Part shown: in pieces, positions 40,109 through 55,556 of the stretch | How the letters are laid out: every line of letters starts with the position of its first letter | Numbering within the stretch: position 1 is the first letter of the stretch | NCBI GenBank assembly: GCA_950097015.1 | Contig: CATNEN010000001.1 | Location: forward strand, 9,238,001 to 9,302,000 | From: Macrostomum hystrix | Lineage: Eukaryota > Animalia > Platyhelminthes | Direction of reading: 5' to 3' | Length of the DNA: 64,000 bases | Notes under the pieces: model-generated | Told to the model about the DNA's origin: nothing | Seen by the model: the letters and a program-made list of their open reading frames with translations, nothing else | Databases searched by the model: none | Made by a program: the position numbers and the translations under genes

Positions 40109-41983
40109 ATGAAAAGCTTGTTGCTCGTCTTCCTCGTTGCCACGGCTGCACTTGCCGATGTAAGTTAATCACGGGGTCTGTACTGTACATAGTACAATCT
40201 ATATCTCTTACCATCATACGAACCATCTCGTTACCAATTCCATCTCGCATTTTGAAGTCGTGAAAATTGAACGAGCATACCCTCATTGCACGCAGCAGCC
40301 ACCAGGTGACGACCCGTCGGCTCAAGAATATGGCAATGAAATCGAAGGCGACATGATCGAGCCGTTTGAAGGGGTGGGTATGGCGGTCTTCTGTTGTCAT
40401 ATCAGCATGGGGATTTCTTGGCATTTTGACAACTAAATCAGCGCGACCTCTGCAGGCGTTCTCTGGCCTGCTGAGCACTTCCAATCGCTGGCCTGGCGGA
40501 GTGGTCGTGTACACAATTGACTCCAGCCTCTGTAAGTGCAGAGGGCTTCCAAATCTTATTAGTAGGCTCATTAGTAAGCACTTCATAATTGAGCAGGATA
40601 AAACTTGCTTCCTACCTGTTCTATTTCGTTCACGCAGCGGACACAGCCAAATCGCGCAGTCTGACAGCGATGCAGCGCATCACTCAGGAGACTGGAGGCT
40701 GCATCAAGTTCCGCAAGGCCACCAGCGCCGACGGTTCTAAATACGTCCGCATCCGCAAAAGGGACAGCGGGTGAGATTTTCACAGTGATCCAATATGATT
40801 GTTGTATGATACATTGCAGTAGCATTGATTCTGCCGGACATTGTCAGGTGCTCCGCCACTGTTGGATACTGGGGTCGCGAGACCAACGTTAATTTGGCTT
40901 CGAGCTGCTCCATTGGCACGATTATGCACGAGTTCCAGCACACTCTGGGTTTGTTTGGATTGACAGACTTTTCTAGGAATTTAGGAGTTAGGAGTGTTGT
41001 GATTTGTGGGATTCGATCTTTGCCACCCGAATTTTACGTTTCAGGCGTCTATCATCAGCAGAGCCGACCTGACAGAGATACATTCGTTTCCATCGCTTTT
41101 GCGAATATTCAGACGAGTAAGAAACAATTAATTACTGCGATCTCTCTGCTCATGATTACGAAGTCGTATCGAGATGCCTGCCACTATAGAGGCGATCTAA
41201 ATTCAACTATTTTATTGCTAGTCTCTAATAGCAGCCAAAAGGTTACGACCTACGACACTCATGCGAGGTTATTGGCTAGGTATATGTACATGAAAATGTG
41301 TCTTCCTTGGGCCAAGGTCGATCGATTGCGGGTCGGTGGCAGAGCTGTTAACGCGTTTGCCTCTCGCACTACGGTCCCTAAGTTCGATTCCGTGGCAAGG
41401 CCACATTTATTTGGGGGCGCAGCCGCGGAGAGAAGTCTTGTGGGCTTGTCGTGTAATTTGCGCCCTTGAGGGCCAACCTCCAAGGCACAGATAAGTGTAC
41501 ATACATACAGGGCAGATGTTGACACCTGTGTGAGCGTGTGCCTGCCTAGGGTATTTGTGTGCATGTGTGCTCAGGAGTCAGCGGAATGGGCAGAATTGCC
41601 TCCTCGCTGTCTGTGGGTCTAGTGTCACTTAATTATGTGCCATTGTGCGCAGCCCTCCTGCAAGTATTATTATTATTATGGGCGATCGATTGTCGCCAAA
41701 ATATTTGTCAGCTGTATCCAGAGCTGTAGTCCAATCAAACAATGCCCTCATTGCAGGTCACGAGCACAATTTCGAAAAGCGCAGCAGCACTCAGGTTGGC
41801 TCCTATGGCGTGGCCTACGACTTCGGCAGCCAGATGCACTATTCTGAGTACGCGTTCAGCAAGAACGGACAGAAAACCATTGTGCCTCGGCCCGGCAAGT
41901 TGCCAGATGGTGTTAAGATTGGTCAACGAGATCGCATGAGCAGCGGCGACGTTCGATTGATCAAGGCGATGTACAAGTGCTGA
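40109..41983 (+). CDS. Secreted astacin metalloprotease, copy 3 (7 exons; SINE in last intron)
   Basis: Same exon layout. HEFQHTLGVYHQQSRPDRD and SQMHY present. Ends MYKC-TGA at 41983. Confidence 0.9.
41329..41679 (+). mobile_element. tRNA-derived SINE in astacin copy 3 intron 6
   Basis: Head GGGTCGGTGGCAGAGC, B-box and (TAT)n tail, flanked by duplicated CGATCGATTG. The equivalent intron of copy 2 (about 34255) lacks it. Confidence 0.9.
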
Positions 41984-46257: not shown

Positions 46258-47843
46258 TAGTATTTGTCATGCTATCTCAGCCTAGAGACATCCAAACTCA
46301 GCCAGCCCATCTCGACAGTGCAATTTTTTACGTAAGCCAGTCGACTTTTACTATAGACATGCTTCTTAAGGCCATGCTATCTCAGCCTGGGACATGCAAT
46401 CTCAGCCACTTTTCAGATGCTATGTCAAGCTGTCTGTGGCTTAGTCTGTGATCGAAGCAAATGAAACAGAATGAGAACAACAAGCAACGAAGACAGAAGA
46501 CGACTGATTGCTGCGTGGACGGAAGGTCAGGACCTACGTGTGGCCGCCAAAGTTCTTCGCATGAATATGAAGACAGCTCGGCATATCGTCAGGATTTATG
46601 AAGCAACGGGCCGGGTGGATGCCCTCCCGCGAGGGGGAAGAAAGATTGGCTCATGCAAGTTCGATGAGGAGATGCGCCAGGCGCTTATTGCTTTCGTGGA
46701 TGCGAACCCCCTGGCGACGCTGAAAGCATTGCGCACGAAGCTGAGTGCCCAGCTTCCCAACAAGCCGCCTGTCACCATCAAGACACTGGCCAGAGCCTTG
46801 GAAGGGGCTTTGTACACGTTCAAGATCGCTACCAAGAACACTGACATCCGACTGAGCGCAAACTCACAGGGGGTGATCGAGAAGAGACGCGAGTACGCGC
46901 TGCTCATGACCGAACTGCAACAAGACACGGTGGTCGTCTACATCGACGAAACGGGTTACAACCTGTGGACTCGCAGATCGCAAGGGTGGTCACGACGGGG
47001 TCAGCCAGTGAGGCGCCGATGCCCGACCCAGAGGGGTCCAAATCTCTCGATCTGCCTGGCCGTGTCTTCCGCTTTGGGGCTGGTGAAGAGCGAGTTTTTC
47101 AGGGGAGGCCAGACGAAGGAGAGATTTCAGCACTTCGTCAACGACCTTGTTGAACAAGTTGTCCCGCAGATCGGCAATGCCAGAGTCGTCATTGTCTGCG
47201 ATGGCCCCACCTTTCACCGTGGTGTGGCAGTGCCGGAGCAGCATCGCCACCAGTTTGAGCTTCATCTGTTGCCCGCCTACTCACCTTTTCTAAACCCCTG
47301 CGAAATGGCCCACAGCGCAGTGAAGGCCTCGATCAAGCTGCAGCTAGCTGACCCTGCACTGGTGGAGGAGGAGGCTGGTGGCCGACCCGATGGGTTCACC
47401 TGCGAAGCTTGGCGCCTCATTCTCTTGGAGCGAGTGGGCCGAGTCGCGCTAGATGCTGTGACGCCGCTAAAGGTGGCCAGATGGGAGATTCACTGCAATC
47501 GGAACTTCCCGCAGTGTATCGCAGAGCAGCCTTTCAACTAGGCTGAGCACTGAGCGTCTTACTGACTTTGTCCGTTGTTGCGTACCCTTACTGACTTTTC
47601 TTGTTGCGTTCATTCATTGCTGTTTGTTGCCATTTCATGTCACGTTACAGAAATGATAGCATTGAGATCTGTTTGCAATTGAAATCTATATTGGCTGAGA
47701 TTGCATGTCCCAGGCTGAGATAGCATGGCCTTAAGAAGCATGTCTATGGTAAAAGTCGACTAGCTCGAGCCAAAAAAACGCATTGCGGAATGGGACTGGC
47801 TGAGTTTGGATGTCTCTAGGCTGAGATAGCATGACAAATACTA
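46258..47843 (+). mobile_element. Tc1/mariner/IS630-superfamily DNA transposon, about 150-bp TIRs, TA TSD
   Basis: TA|TAGTATTTGTCATGCTATCTCAGCC ... GGCTGAGATAGCATGACAAATACTA|TA, with internal repeats of CTCAGCC. Confidence 0.93.
46471..47541 (+). CDS. Intact DD33E transposase, 356 aa
   Basis: N-terminal HTH with PRGGRK linker, YIDETG, VCDG(x33)E and LPAYSPFLNPCE. Confidence 0.92.
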   Translation: MRTTSNEDRRRLIAAWTEGQDLRVAAKVLRMNMKTARHIVRIYEATGRVDALPRGGRKIGSCKFDEEMRQALIAFVDANPLATLKALRTKLSAQLPNKPPVTIKTLARALEGALYTFKIATKNTDIRLSANSQGVIEKRREYALLMTELQQDTVVVYIDETGYNLWTRRSQGWSRRGQPVRRRCPTQRGPNLSICLAVSSALGLVKSEFFRGGQTKERFQHFVNDLVEQVVPQIGNARVVIVCDGPTFHRGVAVPEQHRHQFELHLLPAYSPFLNPCEMAHSAVKASIKLQLADPALVEEEAGGRPDGFTCEAWRLILLERVGRVALDAVTPLKVARWEIHCNRNFPQCIAEQPFN

Positions 47844-49905: not shown

Positions 49906-52900
49906 ATGGCGCAATATAATCAGTCAACTGATGTAATTGATATCCTAAATGAACTTTTTGTAAGTTAATTTTGCATGTGTTTTTAATCTATCTAAAATAA
50001 AAAAATCTACAAAAAAGATAAAATCGTTAATTTTAGTTACCTGAAACGAACTCTGAGCAGTCAGTAAATCAGCCAACAGTTATGAGTCAATATAGTCAGG
50101 GTTCTGCTGATAGTGCATACCTAAGCATTGGAGTATGTTTTTTCACTGTTCTATATATACATTTATCTAACAAAAACTGGCATTGTTATAAAAAATATTT
50201 TTCTCTAATAAATTATGCATGTTTCAGAACAATCAGCTAGATTTTAATCCATCGCAAAGCTTTGCTTTGGATTCCTCTATAAAATATTACTGAAATCCCA
50301 GATCCTCTAAAATATATTACTGAAATCCCAGATCCTCTAAAACTATAACTGAAATCCCAGATCCTCTATAAAATATTACTGAAATCCCAGATCCTCTAAT
50401 AAATATTACTGAAATCCCTGATCCTCTATAGAATATTACTGAAATCCCAGATCCTCTATAAAATATTACTGAAATCCCAGATCCTAAATAGAATATTACT
50501 GAAATCCCAGATCCTCTATAAAATATTACTAAAATCCCAAATCATCTATAAAATATTACTGAAATCCCAGATCCTCATGTAGAATATTACTGAAATCCCA
50601 GATCCTCTAAAACTATTGCTGAAATCCCAGATCCTCCATAAAATATTACTGAAACCCCAGATTCTCTATAAAATATTACTGAAATCCCAGATCCTCAGGT
50701 AGAATATTACTGAAATCCCAGATCCTCAGGTAGAATATTACTGAAATCCCAGATCCTCTATAAAATATTACTAAAATCCCAGATCCTCTATAGAATATTA
50801 CTGAAATCCTAGATCCTCTATAGAATATTACTGAAATGCCAGATCATCTATAAAATATTACTAAAATCCCAGATCCTCTATAAAATATTACTAAAATCCC
50901 AGATCATCTATAAAATATTACGGAAATCCCAGATCCTCCGGTAGAATATTACTGAAACCCCAGATCCTCCGGTAGAATATTACTGAAACCCCAGATCCTC
51001 CGGTAGAATATTACTGAAACCCCAGATCCTCCAGTAGAATATTACTGAAACCCCAGATCCTCCGGTAGAATATTACTGAAACCCCAGATCCTCCGGTAGA
51101 ATATTACTGAAACCCCAGATCCTCCGGTAGAATATTACTGAAACCCCAGATCCTCCGGTAGAATATTACTGAAACCCCAGATCCTCCGGTAGAATATTAC
51201 TGAAACCCCAGATCCTCCGGTAGAATATTACTGAAACCCCAGATCCTCCGGTAGAATATTACTGAAACCCCAGATCCTCCGGTAGAATATTACTGAAACC
51301 CCAGATCCTCCGGTAGAAAATTACTGATCTTCAGATCGCATACTACGAAGATCCTTGATCTTCAAAGTTTAAAAAAAAGTTGATTTGAAATTCACTGATT
51401 AAAATTCACACAAGCTTCCTCTGTTATACCTAACCAATGGCTGCAGCCGCTGGTAAATATACAAATCGAAAATCAGCCAATGAAGTCGCATCGAGTCAGA
51501 TCTAAAGGCGAAATGGCCGACTTTGCCAGCAGGGGCAGCGCCAAAGCCACTGGCAGTCGCCTGAAAGGTAGTCGCGGCACAAACGACTTTGTGACTATCT
51601 CCCTAACTTTAAATGGGAGTAAAGAAACTGTTAGTGGCGAGTTGATAGTTATGCTGATTGGATGCCATGGCGGACTAGATATCCAATCTAAACCAGTGAA
51701 AATTCATCCCTACAGTCTGTGTGGCGACTTTTGTGATAACGGACTGTACCGAAAGACAGTGCTAGTCGGTAGCCAACAATCTACTACTGTCATGTAAGTT
51801 AAAGTAAAAATTTACATTTTTTTCGATCCTTTCGTCGCATAGTAAAATATAAAAATGAGCTATTAAATCCCGGGTCCTGGATCCCCGAAAAAATCCCAGA
51901 TCCTCATACCAATAATTTGTTATGATTGTAACATCATACCAGATGCTTATACCAGATACTGGTACCAACCAATCATTTAGTGAGCTACTAGGGCCTGACA
52001 TCCCAGATCCTCATATTTAGTGAGCTACTAGGGCCTGACATCCCAGATCCTCATATTTAGTGAGCTACTAGGGCCTGACATCCCAGATTCTCATATTTAG
52101 TGAGCTACTACGGCCTGACATCCCAGATCCTCATATTTAGTGAGCTACTAGGGCCTGACATCCCAGATCCTGATATTTAGTGAGCTACTAGGGCCTGACA
52201 TCCCAGATCCTGATATTTAGTGAGCTACTAGGGCCTGACATCCCAGATTCTCATATTTAGTGAGCTACTAGGGCCTGACATCCCAGATCCTGATATTTAG
52301 TGAGCTACTAGGGCCTGACATCCCAGATCCTCATATTTAGTGAGCTACTAGGGCCTGACATCCCAGATCCTCATATTTAGTGAGCTACTAGGGCCTGACA
52401 TCCCAGATTCTCATATTTAGTGAGCTACTACGGCCTGACATCCCAGATCCTCATATTTAGTGAGCTACTACGGCCTGACATCCCAGATTCTCATATTTAG
52501 TGAGCTACTACGGCCTGACATCCCAGATCCTCATATTTAGTGAGCTACTACGGCCTGACATCCCAGATCCTCATATTTAGTGAGCTGCTAGGGCCTGACA
52601 TCCCAGATCCTCATATTTAGTGAGCTGCTAGGGCCTGACATCCCAGATCCTCATATTTAGTGAGCTACTAGGGCCTGACATCCCAGATCCTCATATTTAG
52701 TGAGCTACTAGGGCCTGACATCCCAGATCCTCATATTTAGTGAGCTACTAGGGCCTGACATCCCAGATCCTCATATTTAGTGAGCTACTAGGGCCTGACA
52801 TCCCAGATTCTCATATTTAGTGAGCTGCTAGGGCCTGACATCCCAGATCCTCATATTTAGTGAGCTACTAGGGCCTGACATCCCAGATCCTCATATTTAG

Positions 52901-55107
52901 TGAGCTGCTAGGGCCTGACATCCCAGATCCTCATATTTAGTGAGCTACTAGGGCCTGACATCCCAGATCCTCATATTTAGTGAGCTACTAGGGCCTGACA
53001 TCCCAGATCCTCATATTTAGTGAGCTGCTAGGGCCTGACGCCTCAAATCCTCAAATGATATTATGTAGCAATAGTTGGCAGTAAATTTCGCTAAACTACA
53101 ATTTTCAGGCTTAACAAACAAGGCATTGTTCAGTGCAAGAAGAAAGACCTGACCTCTACCGTCGATGAGAAAGCAAAGTTATTGCTGGAATTGTTCAAGG
53201 ATGAGAAAAGCCGCGGCTTGTTTTGTAAGTTGTAGCTAGAGGTTTTGCATATTGTTACTAAATATTTTAACGTGTTCTTTCTCTTCTTCGCTAACAAATA
53301 CCAACCAATCATATTTAGATCAACGAGATGACATGTTCTCTGGGCCATTGTGTATCGATCCGCTTAATACAGCAGATTCTAATCTGAGAATTCTATTTGC
53401 TTACCTACCGGCATCAAGCGTTATCAACGCTTTTGCGCTATCGGATCCAATTTCATGTAAGTATTACTGATATACTCTCTTGTGTATTACTCGGATGTAT
53501 TTGGCGACAGACACCTGCGTAAGTAGGCGCACAGTTAGCAGGCTATCTTAAATGATTTCAAACGATTTCAAAGATGTCAGGATGTCAGGATGTCAGTGAT
53601 GTCAGAATTTCAAAGATGTCAGAATGTCAAAGATGTCTGAATGACAGTATGTAAAAGATGTCAGGATGTCAAAGATGTCAGGATGTCAAAGATGTCAGGA
53701 TGTCAAAGATCTCAGGATGTAAAAGATTTCAGGATATCAAAGATGTCAGGATGTCAAAGATGTCAGAATGACAGTATGTCAAGATGTCAGAATGTCAAAG
53801 ATGTCAGTATGTCAAAGATGTCAGAATGTCAGAATGTCAAAGATGTCAGAATGACAATATGTCAAAGATGTCAGAATGTCAGAATGTCAAAGATGTCAGA
53901 ATGACAGTATGTCAAAGATATCAGGATGTCAATCTTTACCAGATGTCAGGATGAGTTAGCGAGAGGCAAACGTGTAAAACTGCGCTGCCCCTAGGGTGTG
54001 TGGTTTCGAGTCTGTATGTATAGTCTGCAGACTGCAGTTTAGGCTGGGAAACTACCGACATCCCTATGTAGAATATTCTAAGCTCAATAATAAAGCTTGT
54101 ACGAGTATATCGATGTTCTGAAACTGCATTCCGTGCCATTGCAGGCTGTGCTGGCAATTCCGGCGGCAAAGATTTCAAAGTGAAAGCCTTTAATCCAGTG
54201 TCTGTTGTGCTGAATGTTGAGCAGAATCCACCAATTAGTTCGGATGTGTGGCTGCAGCTGGAGGCTGATGTCAGTAAGTTGCTAATAATAATGATAAGAA
54301 AAGAAGTTTTTCGAGCATTCTGAACTATAAATAGTTTTTTTCTTGTGTCTTTTTCAGAAGTGAAATCTGAGAGGGTCACAGCTGAGTTGGTGCTGCCAGT
54401 CGCGCCTATACTTGTCGCTGATCCTGCCTCTCCGAAAACTGTTCGCGTTGTCATTGACGATTTGGAAGTCGAACGAGTAAGAGAAGGGGGCTTATGCAAT
54501 ACGCTCGTATATGCCCTTGAGGGCCAACCTCCAAGGCACAGTTGAAAGTGTACACTGCCTGACAATGCCTGTGTGAGCGTGTGCCTGCGTACAGTTTATC
54601 TGGGTGCGTGTGTGCTCATAGAATTAATGACGAGTGCCCCGTGGCAATGGGGTTGTTGGAAATTGGAAGTCAGAGTTCAAGGCAATGATTTTTTGACACT
54701 AACGGCTACCGCCGTTCGGCTACGGCTACGGCCGCTCGTGTCCAAGGCCTTAAACTCTGACTTCCAATGAGCCCTCCATTGCAAACATCATTATCGACTC
54801 AAAAGCGTCACCAACCTCTCAGAAAGGTCATTATACAAGTTAAACAATTTTTATCGTTCATAAATTGCAGAACCTCGTTAAGCTGGGCCTAACCCAGCTC
54901 AAATGTGAGCAACTAGAGCTACAAAATATTAACAATAGCGACTTCATGGCCGATTTGTGTCTATCAAGAACGTCCAACCCGATTGCTGGCGAGGCTGCCG
55001 CCCAGACAGTTACCAGCACTGTCGCCCTGAGAGTCGTCTTCGCGGAGACGCACACGGCCTCGATGGACAAGAGGCGTAAAGTGGCCTCCAATATGCCTTC
55101 ATATTAG
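49906..55107 (+). CDS. Divergent Rel-homology-domain (NF-kB/Rel/NFAT family) transcription factor; exons 49906-49959, 50037-50132, 51447-51793, 53109-53224, 53319-53456, 54145-54273, 54358-54476, 54871-55107; about 411 aa. The 5' exons are less certain.
   Basis: IQIENQPMKSHRVR..E, SRGSAK, KIHPYSLCGDFCDNG, LNKQGIVQCKKKDL, NLRILF..ALSDPIS, an IPT-like region and terminal KRRK. All junctions are GT-AG and phase-consistent (the last six exons total 1086 nt). Confidence 0.78.
50270..51325. repeat. 30/31-bp intronic minisatellite (AATATTACTGAAATCCCAGATCCTCTATA; later CCGGTAG variant)
   Basis: About 35 tandem copies with a gradient from 30-bp to 31-bp units. Confidence 0.95.
51975..53050. repeat. 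40-bp intronic minisatellite (TGAGCTACTAGGGCCTGACATCCCAGATCCTCATATTTAG)
   Basis: About 27 near-identical copies. Confidence 0.96.
53570..53952. repeat. Degenerate 8/9-bp repeat (AAGATGTCA / GGATGTCA)
   Basis: Visible low-order repeat in an intron of the RHD gene. Confidence 0.85.
54481..54620 (+). mobile_element. SINE internal fragment next to a splice donor
   Basis: GCCCTTGAGGGCCAACCTCCAAGGCACAG..CACTGCCTGAC..CCTGTGTGAGCGTGTGCC matches the SINE family. Confidence 0.75.
54662..54768. mobile_element. Small hairpin MITE-like element
   Basis: ATTGGAAGTCAGAGTTCAAGGC and GCCTTAAACTCTGACTTCCAAT form a 22-bp inverted repeat with one mismatch. Confidence 0.55.
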
Positions 55108-55556
55108 GGCAATATTTTGTTGCTTGTGTTAAGAGTTTCTCGATCTTTATTGCCGCTCATATTTTCTTGGTGTAGATTTTTTATATATTTTTTTCTAATT
55201 GTGTGTTTACATAATATATATCGGAGTTTTAATAATGATTGATTAAATCAATGCCGCAATTAATTAACTGCAAACAAATATATATCTGGCTCTTGTGTTT
55301 TTTAATTTATTTAAATCTTGAATTGAGAATGCGCTATTGCATAGGCATAGCACAGCGAGTATCTCTCTCCTTTTGCCGCTTTCCGATTGGTCCGCCTCTC
55401 ATCGTCTAGTCATATTCTCTTACCCTCTTCGCACACCCCACTCTTATCTACTACCGTCAACCCATCCGATATTGACCAACCGAAATACATTGGTCAATGA
55501 ACCCTAAACACTAGCAAGACATACTTTGGTTGTTTACTTTGGCGTTTTTTTAGTCA

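What the first reader, a model, noticed from the sequence alone, without database searches (positions are those of the whole stretch)
49906..55107. Hidden, highly divergent Rel-homology-domain gene with hybrid NF-kB/NFAT features
Seen: eight small exons separated by minisatellite-filled introns join in phase to about 411 aa. Established RHD landmarks recur in the right order. I.IE.QP..HR.R..E corresponds to Rel EQP..RFRYxCE and NFAT5 QPETQHRARYLTE. SRGSAK is NFAT-type (SRGSVK/SRGAVK). HPYSLCGDFCDNG is Rel-type (HPHxLVGKxCxxG), and LNKQGIVQCKKKD is Rel-type (FxNLGIQCVKKKD). LRILF..LSDPI, an IPT-like beta region and KRRK follow. Inference: it combines an NFAT-like recognition loop with a Rel-like core and may be an undescribed RHD subfamily. 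If the host is a flatworm this matters, since as I recall NF-kB is reported missing from planarians and parasitic flatworms (to be verified).
Basis: partly seen in the sequence, partly recalled or inferred. Interest (0 to 1): 0.9.

Follow-up and report, generated by a model that had tools for sequence, protein, structure and literature searches.

The report
Divergent flatworm Rel-homology transcription factor gene
This is a real, expressed eight-exon gene for a small, fast-evolving member of the Rel/NF-kB family of gene switches in a Macrostomum-like flatworm; its Macrostomum lignano counterpart is already machine-labelled as such, so it is a divergent new member, not a new kind.

Summary
Eight GT..AG exons (49906-55107, + strand) give 411 codons. 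Three introns are filled with minisatellites. Transcript contigs from three runs of one study show four junctions exactly as predicted. A fifth (exon 3/4) follows from a loose end.

The product belongs to the Rel homology domain (RHD) family. Exon 3 alone hits only Pfam RHD_DNA_bind, weakly (14 bits). A profile of the genome's clearer RHD exons scores it 27.5 bits, against 11 for the best of 20,000 shuffles. The only outside relative, a 432-aa M. lignano protein collinear with exons 3-8, scores 25.6 bits. Its low-confidence model matches NF-kB/Rel structures first with two aligners.

The "hybrid" label is true only for short motifs. An NFAT5-like HR.R...E...SRGxxK loop sits beside a Rel-like core. 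Profile and fold comparisons put the protein nearer Rel/NF-kB than NFAT.

It is not undescribed. UniRef names the M. lignano protein "RHD domain-containing protein", and a 2026 paper reports seven divergent RHD factors in a planarian. This genome has at least nine further RHD exons and its own NFAT5-like gene.

Odd features: Tyr→Ser and Cys→Gly in the recognition loop, an enlarged loop, no ankyrin repeats or Pfam-recognised domain beyond the RHD, and a long branch. Verdict: new member of a known kind, moderate interest.

The parts
49906..49959 (+). Exon 1 (18 codons, ATG start; MAQYNQS...)
   Evidence: Open frame followed by a GTAAGT donor. MAQ.N.S is shared with the N-terminus of M. lignano P0004. 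A strong acceptor (tttcag) sits directly before the ATG. The junction to E2 was not seen in reads.
50037..50132 (+). Exon 2 (32 codons)
   Evidence: AG acceptor and GTATGT donor, phase 0. The contig length upstream of E4 (468 nt = 343 of E3 + 96 of E2 + 29) is compatible with it. It was not directly verified.
50273..51327 (.). Intron 2 minisatellite, 31 bp x34.7
   Evidence: Tandem Repeats Finder.
51447..51793 (+). Exon 3: first two thirds of the RHD DNA-binding domain. It holds the recognition loop HRVRSKGE (51489-51512), SRGSAK (51528-51545) and HPYSLCGDFCDNG (51705-51743).
   Evidence: Pfam RHD_DNA_bind is the only hit: E 0.046, 14.1 bits, profile positions 1-84. An HMM of the genome's paralogous RHD exons scores it 27.5 bits, against at most 11.0 for 20,000 shuffles. 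It aligns to P0004 residues 69-186 at E 1e-23. The 3' end at 51793 follows from the loose end.
51975..53053 (.). Intron 3 minisatellite, 40 bp x27
   Evidence: It shares the core ATCCCAGATCCTC with the 31-bp array.
53109..53224 (+). Exon 4: LNKQGIVQCKKKD... (Rel-type GI..KKK strand and the following helix)
   Evidence: 53% identical to P0004 residues 192-223. It aligns to FNNLGIQCVRKKE of RelB. The joint 53224>53319 appears in three runs.
53319..53456 (+). Exon 5: end of the N-terminal domain (LRILFAYLP...LSDPIS)
   Evidence: 45% identical to P0004 residues 240-283. Joints on both sides are seen.
53558..53932 (.). Intron 5 repeat, 17/25 bp x15-21
54145..54273 (+). Exon 6: start of the second, Ig-like domain (FKVKAFNPV...WLQLEAD)
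   Evidence: 57% identical to P0004 residues 288-327. Joints are seen.
54358..54476 (+). Exon 7 (Ig-like domain, weakly conserved)
   Evidence: Joints 54273>54358 and 54476>54871 are seen. There is no significant BLAST match to P0004.
54510..54618 (.). Dispersed ~110-bp repeat inside intron 7 (not part of the coding sequence)
   Evidence: At least 1386 first-look candidates genome-wide at 75-90% identity. It has very high depth in the RNA-like runs.
54871..55107 (+). Exon 8: end of the Ig-like domain, basic cluster KRRK (55069-55080), stop TAG at 55105-55107
   Evidence: 34% identical to P0004 residues 364-427, which has its own basic cluster (AKRPR) at the equivalent C-terminal position. Contigs run on to 55159-55274, which is the 3' UTR.

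Best explanation
The locus is a functional, expressed eight-exon gene of a macrostomid flatworm. It encodes a compact 411-aa transcription factor of the Rel homology domain family. The protein has a short N-terminal tail, an RHD DNA-binding domain (exons 3-5), a second Ig-like domain of the IPT/dimerisation type (exons 6-8), and a basic nuclear-localisation-like cluster 11 residues from the end. It has no ankyrin repeats and no Pfam-recognised domain beyond the RHD region. It is the single-copy counterpart of M. lignano BOX15_Mlig027372g2. The two form a long-branch, lineage-restricted clade beside a larger set of more canonical RHD genes in the same genome. Shown here: gene structure, splicing and expression for five of seven junctions, homology to the RHD, and collinearity with the M. 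lignano protein. Inferred: it enters the nucleus by the C-terminal basic cluster. It dimerises through the Ig-like domain, possibly with other RHD paralogues. It contacts DNA through the retained Arg-x-Arg...Glu loop. The Tyr→Ser and Cys→Gly changes and a 4-6-residue loop insertion probably alter its site preference. Lacking a recognisable activation domain, it may act as a modulator or partner rather than a strong activator.
For: Splicing and expression: GT..AG joints at 53224>53319, 53456>54145, 54273>54358 and 54476>54871, plus a loose end equal to the end of exon 3, in contigs of three runs.

RHD homology:
- Exon 3 hits only PF00554, at profile positions 1-84.
- P0004 hits PF00554 at 25.6 bits, positions 60-136, in a collinear register.
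- An HMM of nine paralogous RHD exons of this genome plus M. lignano P0006 scores exon 3 at 27.5 bits and P0004 at 20.3 bits. The best of 25,000 shuffles scores 11.6. Some of the paralogue exons pass Pfam's cut-off.
- Q, P, R, R, E, H, P, G and C of the RHD signature are among ten invariant columns in alignment A2.
- A profile of the subfamily alone finds 11 PDB sequences at E up to 10, and all are Rel/NF-kB (RelB at 0.007).

Fold (P0004, low-confidence model):
- The first 38 listed Foldseek matches are RHD chains, with E from 5e-7.
- VIA-align on 48,161 chains gives only five hits with Z of 8 or more, all NF-kB/Rel. p50 N-domain scores Z 9.1 and p65 N-domain Z 8.8 with rmsd 3.9 over 138 residues. 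Residues 290-416 match Ig-like/IPT domains at Z 6-7.
- ESM Atlas neighbours are RHD both by features and by structure.

Orthology: exons 3-6 and 8 are collinear with P0004 at 34-57% identity. There is one copy in the genome. The clade has 100/98 support.
Against: - No Pfam hit reaches the curated cut-off of 27 bits, neither for the window exon (14.1) nor for P0004 (25.6).
- All fold evidence is for the M. lignano relative.
- That model is weak (mean pLDDT 39, 55-66 in the N-domain). It was built with an alignment that contained true RHD exons, which may bias it.
- RHD_dimer (PF16179) is not detected by sequence, and the second domain matches generic Ig folds about as well as it matches NFAT1's.
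- The near-invariant DNA-contact Tyr and the Cys are replaced in both species.
- Exon 3 sits on a very long branch (1.45, against 0.34 for P0004). That could mean relaxed constraint.
- The homodimer test gave no answer.
- The E1/E2 and E2/E3 junctions and the true 5' end are unverified.
Confidence: 0.8

Rival explanations
1. It is an RHD-derived protein that has lost sequence-specific DNA binding. It would act only as a dimerisation partner or decoy of the other RHD paralogues, or be on its way to decay.
For: The recognition loop shows Tyr→Ser and Cys→Gly with an inserted loop segment, in both species. The branch is very long compared with another orthologue pair from the same two species (1.79 against 0.38). 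No Pfam domain is detected outside the RHD region. Pfam scores are below threshold.
Against: Both Arg, the Glu, HP..G..C..G, the GI..KKK strand and the C-terminal basic cluster are kept between two species that share only 34-57% identity in the exons that align. That argues for purifying selection on the DNA-binding surface. The frame is intact over eight exons, and the transcript stands as a spliced contig in all three runs.
Confidence: 0.15
2. It is not an RHD at all. It would be a lineage-specific beta-rich protein whose resemblance to the RHD is chance or convergence.
For: Single-sequence searches do not reach canonical RHD proteins. Pfam hits are sub-threshold. The structural model is of low confidence.
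Against: Independent lines all point to the same family and the same register. The shuffle control leaves a gap of 16 bits. Two structural aligners put only RHD chains on top.
Confidence: 0.03
3. It is simply the ordinary NFAT5 or Rel/Dorsal orthologue of this animal, misjudged as divergent.
For: It shows an NFAT-like SRGxxK motif and a Rel-like core.
Against: The genome has a separate NFAT5-like gene with the canonical HRARYLTEGSRGAVKD and CIGILKLRN motifs at C26 and C38. It also has clusters of much more canonical Rel-like RHD exons scoring up to 46.7 bits in the genome search. The window gene is not among the 11 listed matches or 12 scored candidates of PF00554 in its own genome.
Confidence: 0.02

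Closest known systems
Macrostomum lignano hypothetical protein BOX15_Mlig027372g2 (P0004, 432 aa; UniRef: 'RHD domain-containing protein')
   Same: Exons 3-6 and 8 align in the same order at 34-57% identity. It has the same altered loop (R.RS.GE with an insert and S[RQ]GS[AT]KA), the same HP..L.G..C core, the same start of the second domain (VKAFNPV, QLEAD) and a C-terminal basic cluster. There is a single counterpart in this genome.
   Different: Identity is only about 40% in the DNA-binding exon, far more diverged than another RHD orthologue pair of the same two species. The N-terminal tail is longer in M. lignano. No study of this protein was found.
Rel/NF-kB class RHD proteins (RelB, p65, c-Rel, Dorsal/Gambif1, p50, p52)
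   Same: These are the best profile and fold matches. Shared features are QP...R.R...E, HP..L.G..C..G, the GI..KKK strand, a two-domain layout and a basic cluster after the second domain.
   Different: Tyr and Cys of RFRYxCE are Ser and Gly. Extra residues lie between the Glu and the next loop segment. There is no ankyrin or glycine-rich part (class I), and no domain of any kind that Pfam recognises after the RHD region (class II proteins carry an activation region there). Sequence identity in the structural alignments is about 15-20%.
NFAT5/TonEBP and NFAT
   Same: It has His before the first Arg and an SRGxxK segment, like HRARYLTEGSRGAVKD of this genome's own NFAT5-like exon.
   Different: No NFAT chain is found by the subfamily profile. 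NFAT chains rank lower in fold searches. It has GIVQCKKKD where NFAT5 has CIGILKLRN. There is no BLAST match to the genome's NFAT5 exon.
Divergent RHD factors of the planarian Schmidtea mediterranea (PMC13563047, 2026)
   Same: These are flatworm RHD genes on long branches with no clear NF-kB orthology, alongside a well-conserved NFAT5.
   Different: They belong to a different flatworm order.

Membership tests
Rel homology domain superfamily (Pfam PF00554 RHD_DNA_bind) | Significant match to the RHD_DNA_bind profile | tested here: inconclusive
Exon 3 scores 14.1 bits (E 0.046) at profile positions 1-84 and is the only Pfam hit. P0004 scores 25.6 bits (E 1.4e-5) at positions 60-136, against a cut-off of 27.
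Rel homology domain superfamily (Pfam PF00554 RHD_DNA_bind) | Homology to bona fide RHD sequences beyond chance | tested here: met
   An HMM of RHD exons of the same genome (some above Pfam's cut-off) scores exon 3 at 27.5 bits. The best of 20,000 shuffles scores 11.0. With the subfamily-only profile, all 11 PDB hits are Rel/NF-kB.
Rel homology domain superfamily (Pfam PF00554 RHD_DNA_bind) | RHD N-terminal domain fold | tested here: met
   Tested on the M. lignano relative only. VIA-align gives Z 9.1 to the p50 N-domain and Z 8.8 (rmsd 3.9, 138 residues) to the p65 N-domain. The only five chains with Z of 8 or more among 48,161 are RHD. The first 38 listed Foldseek matches are RHD. Caveat: the model has pLDDT 39 overall, 55-66 in this domain, and its alignment contained RHD exons.
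Rel homology domain superfamily (Pfam PF00554 RHD_DNA_bind) | Second IPT/TIG-type dimerisation domain (PF16179) | tested here: inconclusive
   No Pfam hit. Model residues 290-416 are Ig-like at Z 6-7 and match many E-set domains, including the NFAT1 C-terminal RHD at Z 6.5. The homodimer prediction gave no answer.
Canonical kB-site-binding Rel/NF-kB proteins | Recognition loop R-x-R-Y-x-C-E with Tyr and Cys | tested here: not met
   The window gene has R-V-R-S-K-G-E and M. lignano has R-H-R-S-D-G-E. Both Arg and the Glu are kept, Tyr is Ser and Cys is Gly.
NF-kB class I (p105/p100/Relish) | C-terminal ankyrin repeats | tested here: not met
   The protein ends 11 residues after KRRK. No Ank hit appears in any exon or in P0004.
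NFAT/NFAT5 | NFAT-type loop (HRA[HR]Y..EGSRG.VK) and IGILKLRN strand, with best match to NFAT profiles or structures | tested here: not met
   Only HR.R and SRGSAK resemble the motif, with a 4-residue insert between them. The strand reads GIVQCKKKD. No NFAT chain appears, and NFAT chains rank below NF-kB. The genome has its own NFAT5-like gene.
Rel homology domain superfamily (Pfam PF00554 RHD_DNA_bind) | Nuclear localisation signal at the C-terminal end of the RHD | not testable with these tools
   A basic cluster is present at the right place: KRRK in the window gene and AKRPR in M. lignano. Its function is not tested.

The most novel reading that the evidence does not exclude
The window gene and its M. 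lignano counterpart would represent a separate, macrostomid-restricted RHD class. It would be a minimal RHD-plus-NLS factor with a rebuilt recognition loop (no Tyr, no Cys, enlarged loop with an NFAT-like SRGxxK segment on a Rel-like core). It would recognise a non-kB site, evolve fast, and serve as the immune-responsive RHD factor that flatworms otherwise seem to lack.
Probability: 0.15. Interest if true: 0.6.

Novelty: new member of a known kind. Interest (0 to 1): 0.35.

Why it matters
Canonical NF-kB (p50/p105) is reported absent from flatworms (PMC11432056). Which transcription factors carry their innate immune responses is an open question (PMC13563047). This locus shows that a macrostomid flatworm keeps an expressed, conserved but strongly remodelled RHD factor. 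It also keeps tandem clusters of more canonical RHD genes and an NFAT5-like gene. That gives concrete candidates for RNAi and DNA-binding studies in Macrostomum, which is a transgenic model. The altered recognition loop is a natural experiment on which RHD contacts are dispensable. It is not a new kind of system, and the M. lignano counterpart has been in public databases with an automatic RHD label.

Tried and rejected
- Single-sequence searches reached no canonical RHD. These were phmmer of exon 3 against 1.84 billion proteins, P0004 against PDB sequences and exon 3 against PDB sequences.
- Word-based searches with P0002, P0004 and alignment A2 returned only M. lignano proteins. No canonical Rel/NF-kB/NFAT sequences were therefore available by reference, and no phylogeny with them was built.
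- AlphaFold2 of P0004 without an alignment was useless (pLDDT 30).
- MAFFT alignments mixing many exon fragments (A1, A4, A5) were misaligned and were discarded in favour of A2 and A3.
- Complex prediction on two copies of P0004 residues 284-425 gave no answer, which is neither support nor evidence against.
- Rfam found nothing in the window.
- The 209-aa ORF on the minus strand (53936-54565) has no Pfam family and overlaps confirmed plus-strand exons, so it was rejected as a gene.
- Every search was made exon by exon, by reference.


Full report
**Observation**

The stretch 49906-55107 on the plus strand holds eight open pieces bounded by canonical splice signals.

| Exon | Coordinates | Note |
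|---|---|---|
| E1 | 49906-49959 | ATG start |
| E2 | 50037-50132 | |
| E3 | 51447-51793 | |
| E4 | 53109-53224 | |
| E5 | 53319-53456 | |
| E6 | 54145-54273 | |
| E7 | 54358-54476 | |
| E8 | 54871-55107 | TAG stop |

Tandem Repeats Finder confirms that three introns are largely minisatellite. These are 31 bp x34.7 (50273-51327), 40 bp x27 (51975-53053) and 17/25 bp x15-21 (53558-53932).

**Expression and splicing**

A run search found three small runs of one study (X2-X4, coded organism B) that hold about a third of the words of the stretch.

In each of the three runs one contig of 936-1378 nt skips exactly 53225-53318, 53457-54144, 54274-54357 and 54477-54870. All four skipped pieces have GT..AG ends.

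Upstream of E4 the contigs continue with 30 letters that equal the end of E3. The four letters that the aligner placed on the intron, with one mismatch, are the last four of E3. The E3/E4 junction is therefore 51793|53109 with a GTAAGT donor.

Contigs run to 55159-55274, which gives a 3' UTR of at least 167 nt. Only one, intron-bearing copy exists in the genome. The spliced contigs are therefore transcripts and not a processed copy.

The E1/E2 and E2/E3 junctions were not seen. The contigs of X2 and X3 both carry 468 nt upstream of 53105. That equals 343 nt of E3, 96 nt of E2 and 29 nt more. This fits either the last 29 nt of E1 or a short shared leader joined to E2, and I could not tell which. 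E1 begins MAQYNQS and the M. lignano relative begins MAQNNYS, which speaks for E1.

**What the product is**

The joined 411-aa product was therefore neither scored nor folded.

- Exon 3 (116 aa with the split codon, 115 without) has a single Pfam hit, RHD_DNA_bind. It is weak (E 0.046, 14.1 bits, cut-off 27) but starts at profile position 1 and runs to 84.
- A full HMMER pass over 1.84 billion proteins found only two real relatives, both from Macrostomum lignano. A third, weak hit to a repetitive 999-aa protein was not taken as a relative.
- A further search gave the full-length 432-aa protein BOX15_Mlig027372g2 (P0004). UniRef already names it "RHD domain-containing protein", with PF00554 precomputed.
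- Exons 3, 4, 5, 6 and 8 align to P0004 in order at 34-57% identity. Exon 7 does not align significantly.
- P0004 hits RHD_DNA_bind at 25.6 bits (E 1.4e-5) on profile positions 60-136. This continues the register of exon 3.

**Bridging evidence inside the same genome**

PF00554 finds eleven further exon matches in G000 (220 Mb, 42 contigs), four of them above the cut-off. They lie as follows:

- three in tandem at C7:0.39-0.41 Mb
- four at C1:23.98-24.02 Mb
- two at C7:12.50 Mb
- two NFAT-like C-terminal halves at C26 and C38

Their translations carry the canonical EQP...HRFRY..E and HP..L.GD.C..G.

Exon 3 aligns to them over its full length, with best BLASTP E 3e-7 in the small set and 0.02 genome-wide. 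In alignment A2 the columns Q, P, R, R, E, L, H, P, G and C are invariant.

I built an HMM from these paralogue exons plus M. lignano P0006, leaving out the window gene and P0004. It scores exon 3 at 27.5 bits and P0004 at 20.3 bits. The best of 20,000 shuffled exon 3 sequences reaches 11.0, and the best of 5,000 shuffled P0004 sequences reaches 11.6.

A profile made only of P0004 and exons 3 and 4 finds 11 PDB sequences at E up to 10. All are Rel/NF-kB (RelB at 0.007, p65, Gambif1), aligned over HPH.LVGK.C..G and FNNLGIQCVRKKE.

**Fold**

AlphaFold2 of P0004 alone failed (pLDDT 30). With A2 as the alignment, the mean pLDDT is still only 39, with 55-66 in residues 70-200.

Even so, the first 38 listed Foldseek matches are NF-kB p52, p65, c-Rel, p50, RelB, NFAT5 and NFAT1 chains. 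E-values run from 5e-7, with NF-kB ahead of NFAT.

VIA-align does not lean on Foldseek. Among 48,161 representative chains it gives only five with Z of 8 or more, and all five are NF-kB/Rel. The p50 N-domain scores Z 9.1, and the p65 N-domain Z 8.8 with rmsd 3.9 over 138 residues. Residues 290-416 match many Ig-like/IPT domains at Z 6-7, among them the C-terminal RHD of NFAT1.

The ESM Atlas gives RHD clusters as nearest neighbours, both by features and by its own model's structure (TM 0.47 over residues 69-409).

Three caveats apply. The model is weak. Its alignment contained true RHD exons. It is a model of the M. lignano relative, not of the window's protein.

**Rel-like, NFAT-like or hybrid?**

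This genome's own NFAT5-like exon reads QPELNHRARYLTEGSRGAVKD, and the window gene reads QPMKSHRVRSKGE-MADFA-SRGSAKA. The later part (HPYSLCGDFCDNG, GIVQCKKKD) is Rel-like, where the NFAT-like genes here have CIGILKLRN.

Every quantitative comparison nevertheless puts the protein nearer Rel/NF-kB. Exon 3 matches the Rel-like paralogues and not the NFAT5 exon. The His before the first Arg is shared by nearly all the Macrostomum RHD exons aligned here. In M. lignano the loop segment reads SQGSTK.

I therefore regard "hybrid" as a motif-level resemblance of unknown origin, not a demonstrated mosaic ancestry. A phylogeny with canonical families could not be run, because no canonical sequences were obtainable by reference.

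**Peculiarities that are real**

- In both species the recognition loop is R-x-R-S-x-G-E. The two Arg and the Glu that contact bases in solved RHD-DNA complexes (established knowledge of p50/p65/NFAT structures) are kept. The near-invariant Tyr and the Cys are not.
- The loop after the Glu is 4-6 residues longer than in Rel or NFAT5.
- The protein ends 11 residues after a basic cluster (KRRK; AKRPR in M. lignano). This is where Rel proteins carry their nuclear localisation signal. There are no ankyrin repeats, and Pfam detects nothing outside the RHD region.
- In a tree of the N-terminal exon, the window gene and P0004 form a clade (100/98) on a long stem. The path between them is 1.79 changes per site, against 0.38 for another RHD orthologue pair of the same two genomes (L014/P0006). 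Most of the excess lies on the window's branch. The gene evolves fast in this lineage.

**Likely mechanism (inferred)**

The protein is probably a compact nuclear RHD factor. It would dimerise through its Ig-like domain, alone or with the other RHD paralogues. It would bind DNA through the retained Arg/Arg/Glu loop with a changed site preference. With no recognisable activation domain, it may modulate rather than drive transcription.

A homodimer prediction gave no answer. The main rival is an RHD-derived protein that no longer binds DNA specifically.

**Host**

All relatives in the protein libraries come from M. lignano. P0004 itself is not in G000. Earlier notes of this scan call the genome a Macrostomum flatworm.

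The assembly's size and contiguity would fit the M. hystrix assembly mentioned in PMC11410931, but I did not verify the species.

**What is known**

- PMC11432056 reports no p50/p105 in Platyhelminthes.
- PMC13563047 (Development 2026) reports seven highly divergent RHD factors and a conserved NFAT5 in Schmidtea, none clearly an NF-kB orthologue.
- I found no paper on RHD genes of Macrostomum.
- The scan had not noted this on other DNA.

**Verdict**

The "hybrid/undescribed subfamily" reading is only partly supported. This is a new, unusually divergent member of a known family, whose counterpart in M. lignano already carries an automatic RHD label.

Noticed in passing
window 54510-54618 (intron 7): A ~110-bp dispersed repeat with at least 1386 first-look candidates across the genome at 75-90% identity. 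It reaches depth 500-1100 in the RNA-like runs, so it is carried in many transcripts. It looks like a SINE or MITE. Beside it is a 22-nt inverted repeat at 54662-54683 / 54747-54768.
   Followed up: partly
window 50273-51327 and 51975-53053: The 31-bp and 40-bp intron minisatellites share the core ATCCCAGATCCTC. The core also stands once at about 51893, which suggests a common origin.
   Followed up: no
window 55557 to beyond 60000: A very long 32-bp tandem array (about 139 copies, 95% matches) lies directly downstream of the gene.
   Followed up: no
G000 C7:389919-407456, C1:23977956-24016044, C7:12496861-12501011 (loci L004-L011, L014): Tandem clusters of more canonical RHD DNA-binding exons (EQP...HRFRY..E, HP..L.GD.C..G), up to 46.7 bits on PF00554 in the genome search. 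This looks like a local expansion of Rel-like genes in a flatworm.
   Followed up: partly
L012:243-575 (G000 C26, about 344.7 kb) and L013 (C38, about 8.416 Mb): NFAT5-like gene parts with the canonical QPELNHRARYLTEGSRGAVKD and CIGILKLRN...RLVFRV. The hit in L012 has one TAA inside it.
   Followed up: partly
window 46471-47541 (+) and 40825-41469 (+): An intact 356-aa DDE_3 (Tc1/IS630-type) transposase ORF lies upstream of the gene, and an astacin metalloprotease exon lies further upstream.
   Followed up: no
transcript contigs of X2 and X3, 5' ends: Contigs from two runs both begin exactly 468 nt upstream of 53105, which is 29 nt beyond exon 2. This could be a de Bruijn branch point at a shared spliced leader rather than exon 1. 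Strong acceptors precede both exon 1 and exon 2.
   Followed up: no
ESM Atlas neighbours of P0004: Several large rotifer clusters of 'hypothetical proteins' with only patchy RHD annotation sit among the nearest neighbours. They may be another pool of divergent RHD proteins.
   Followed up: no
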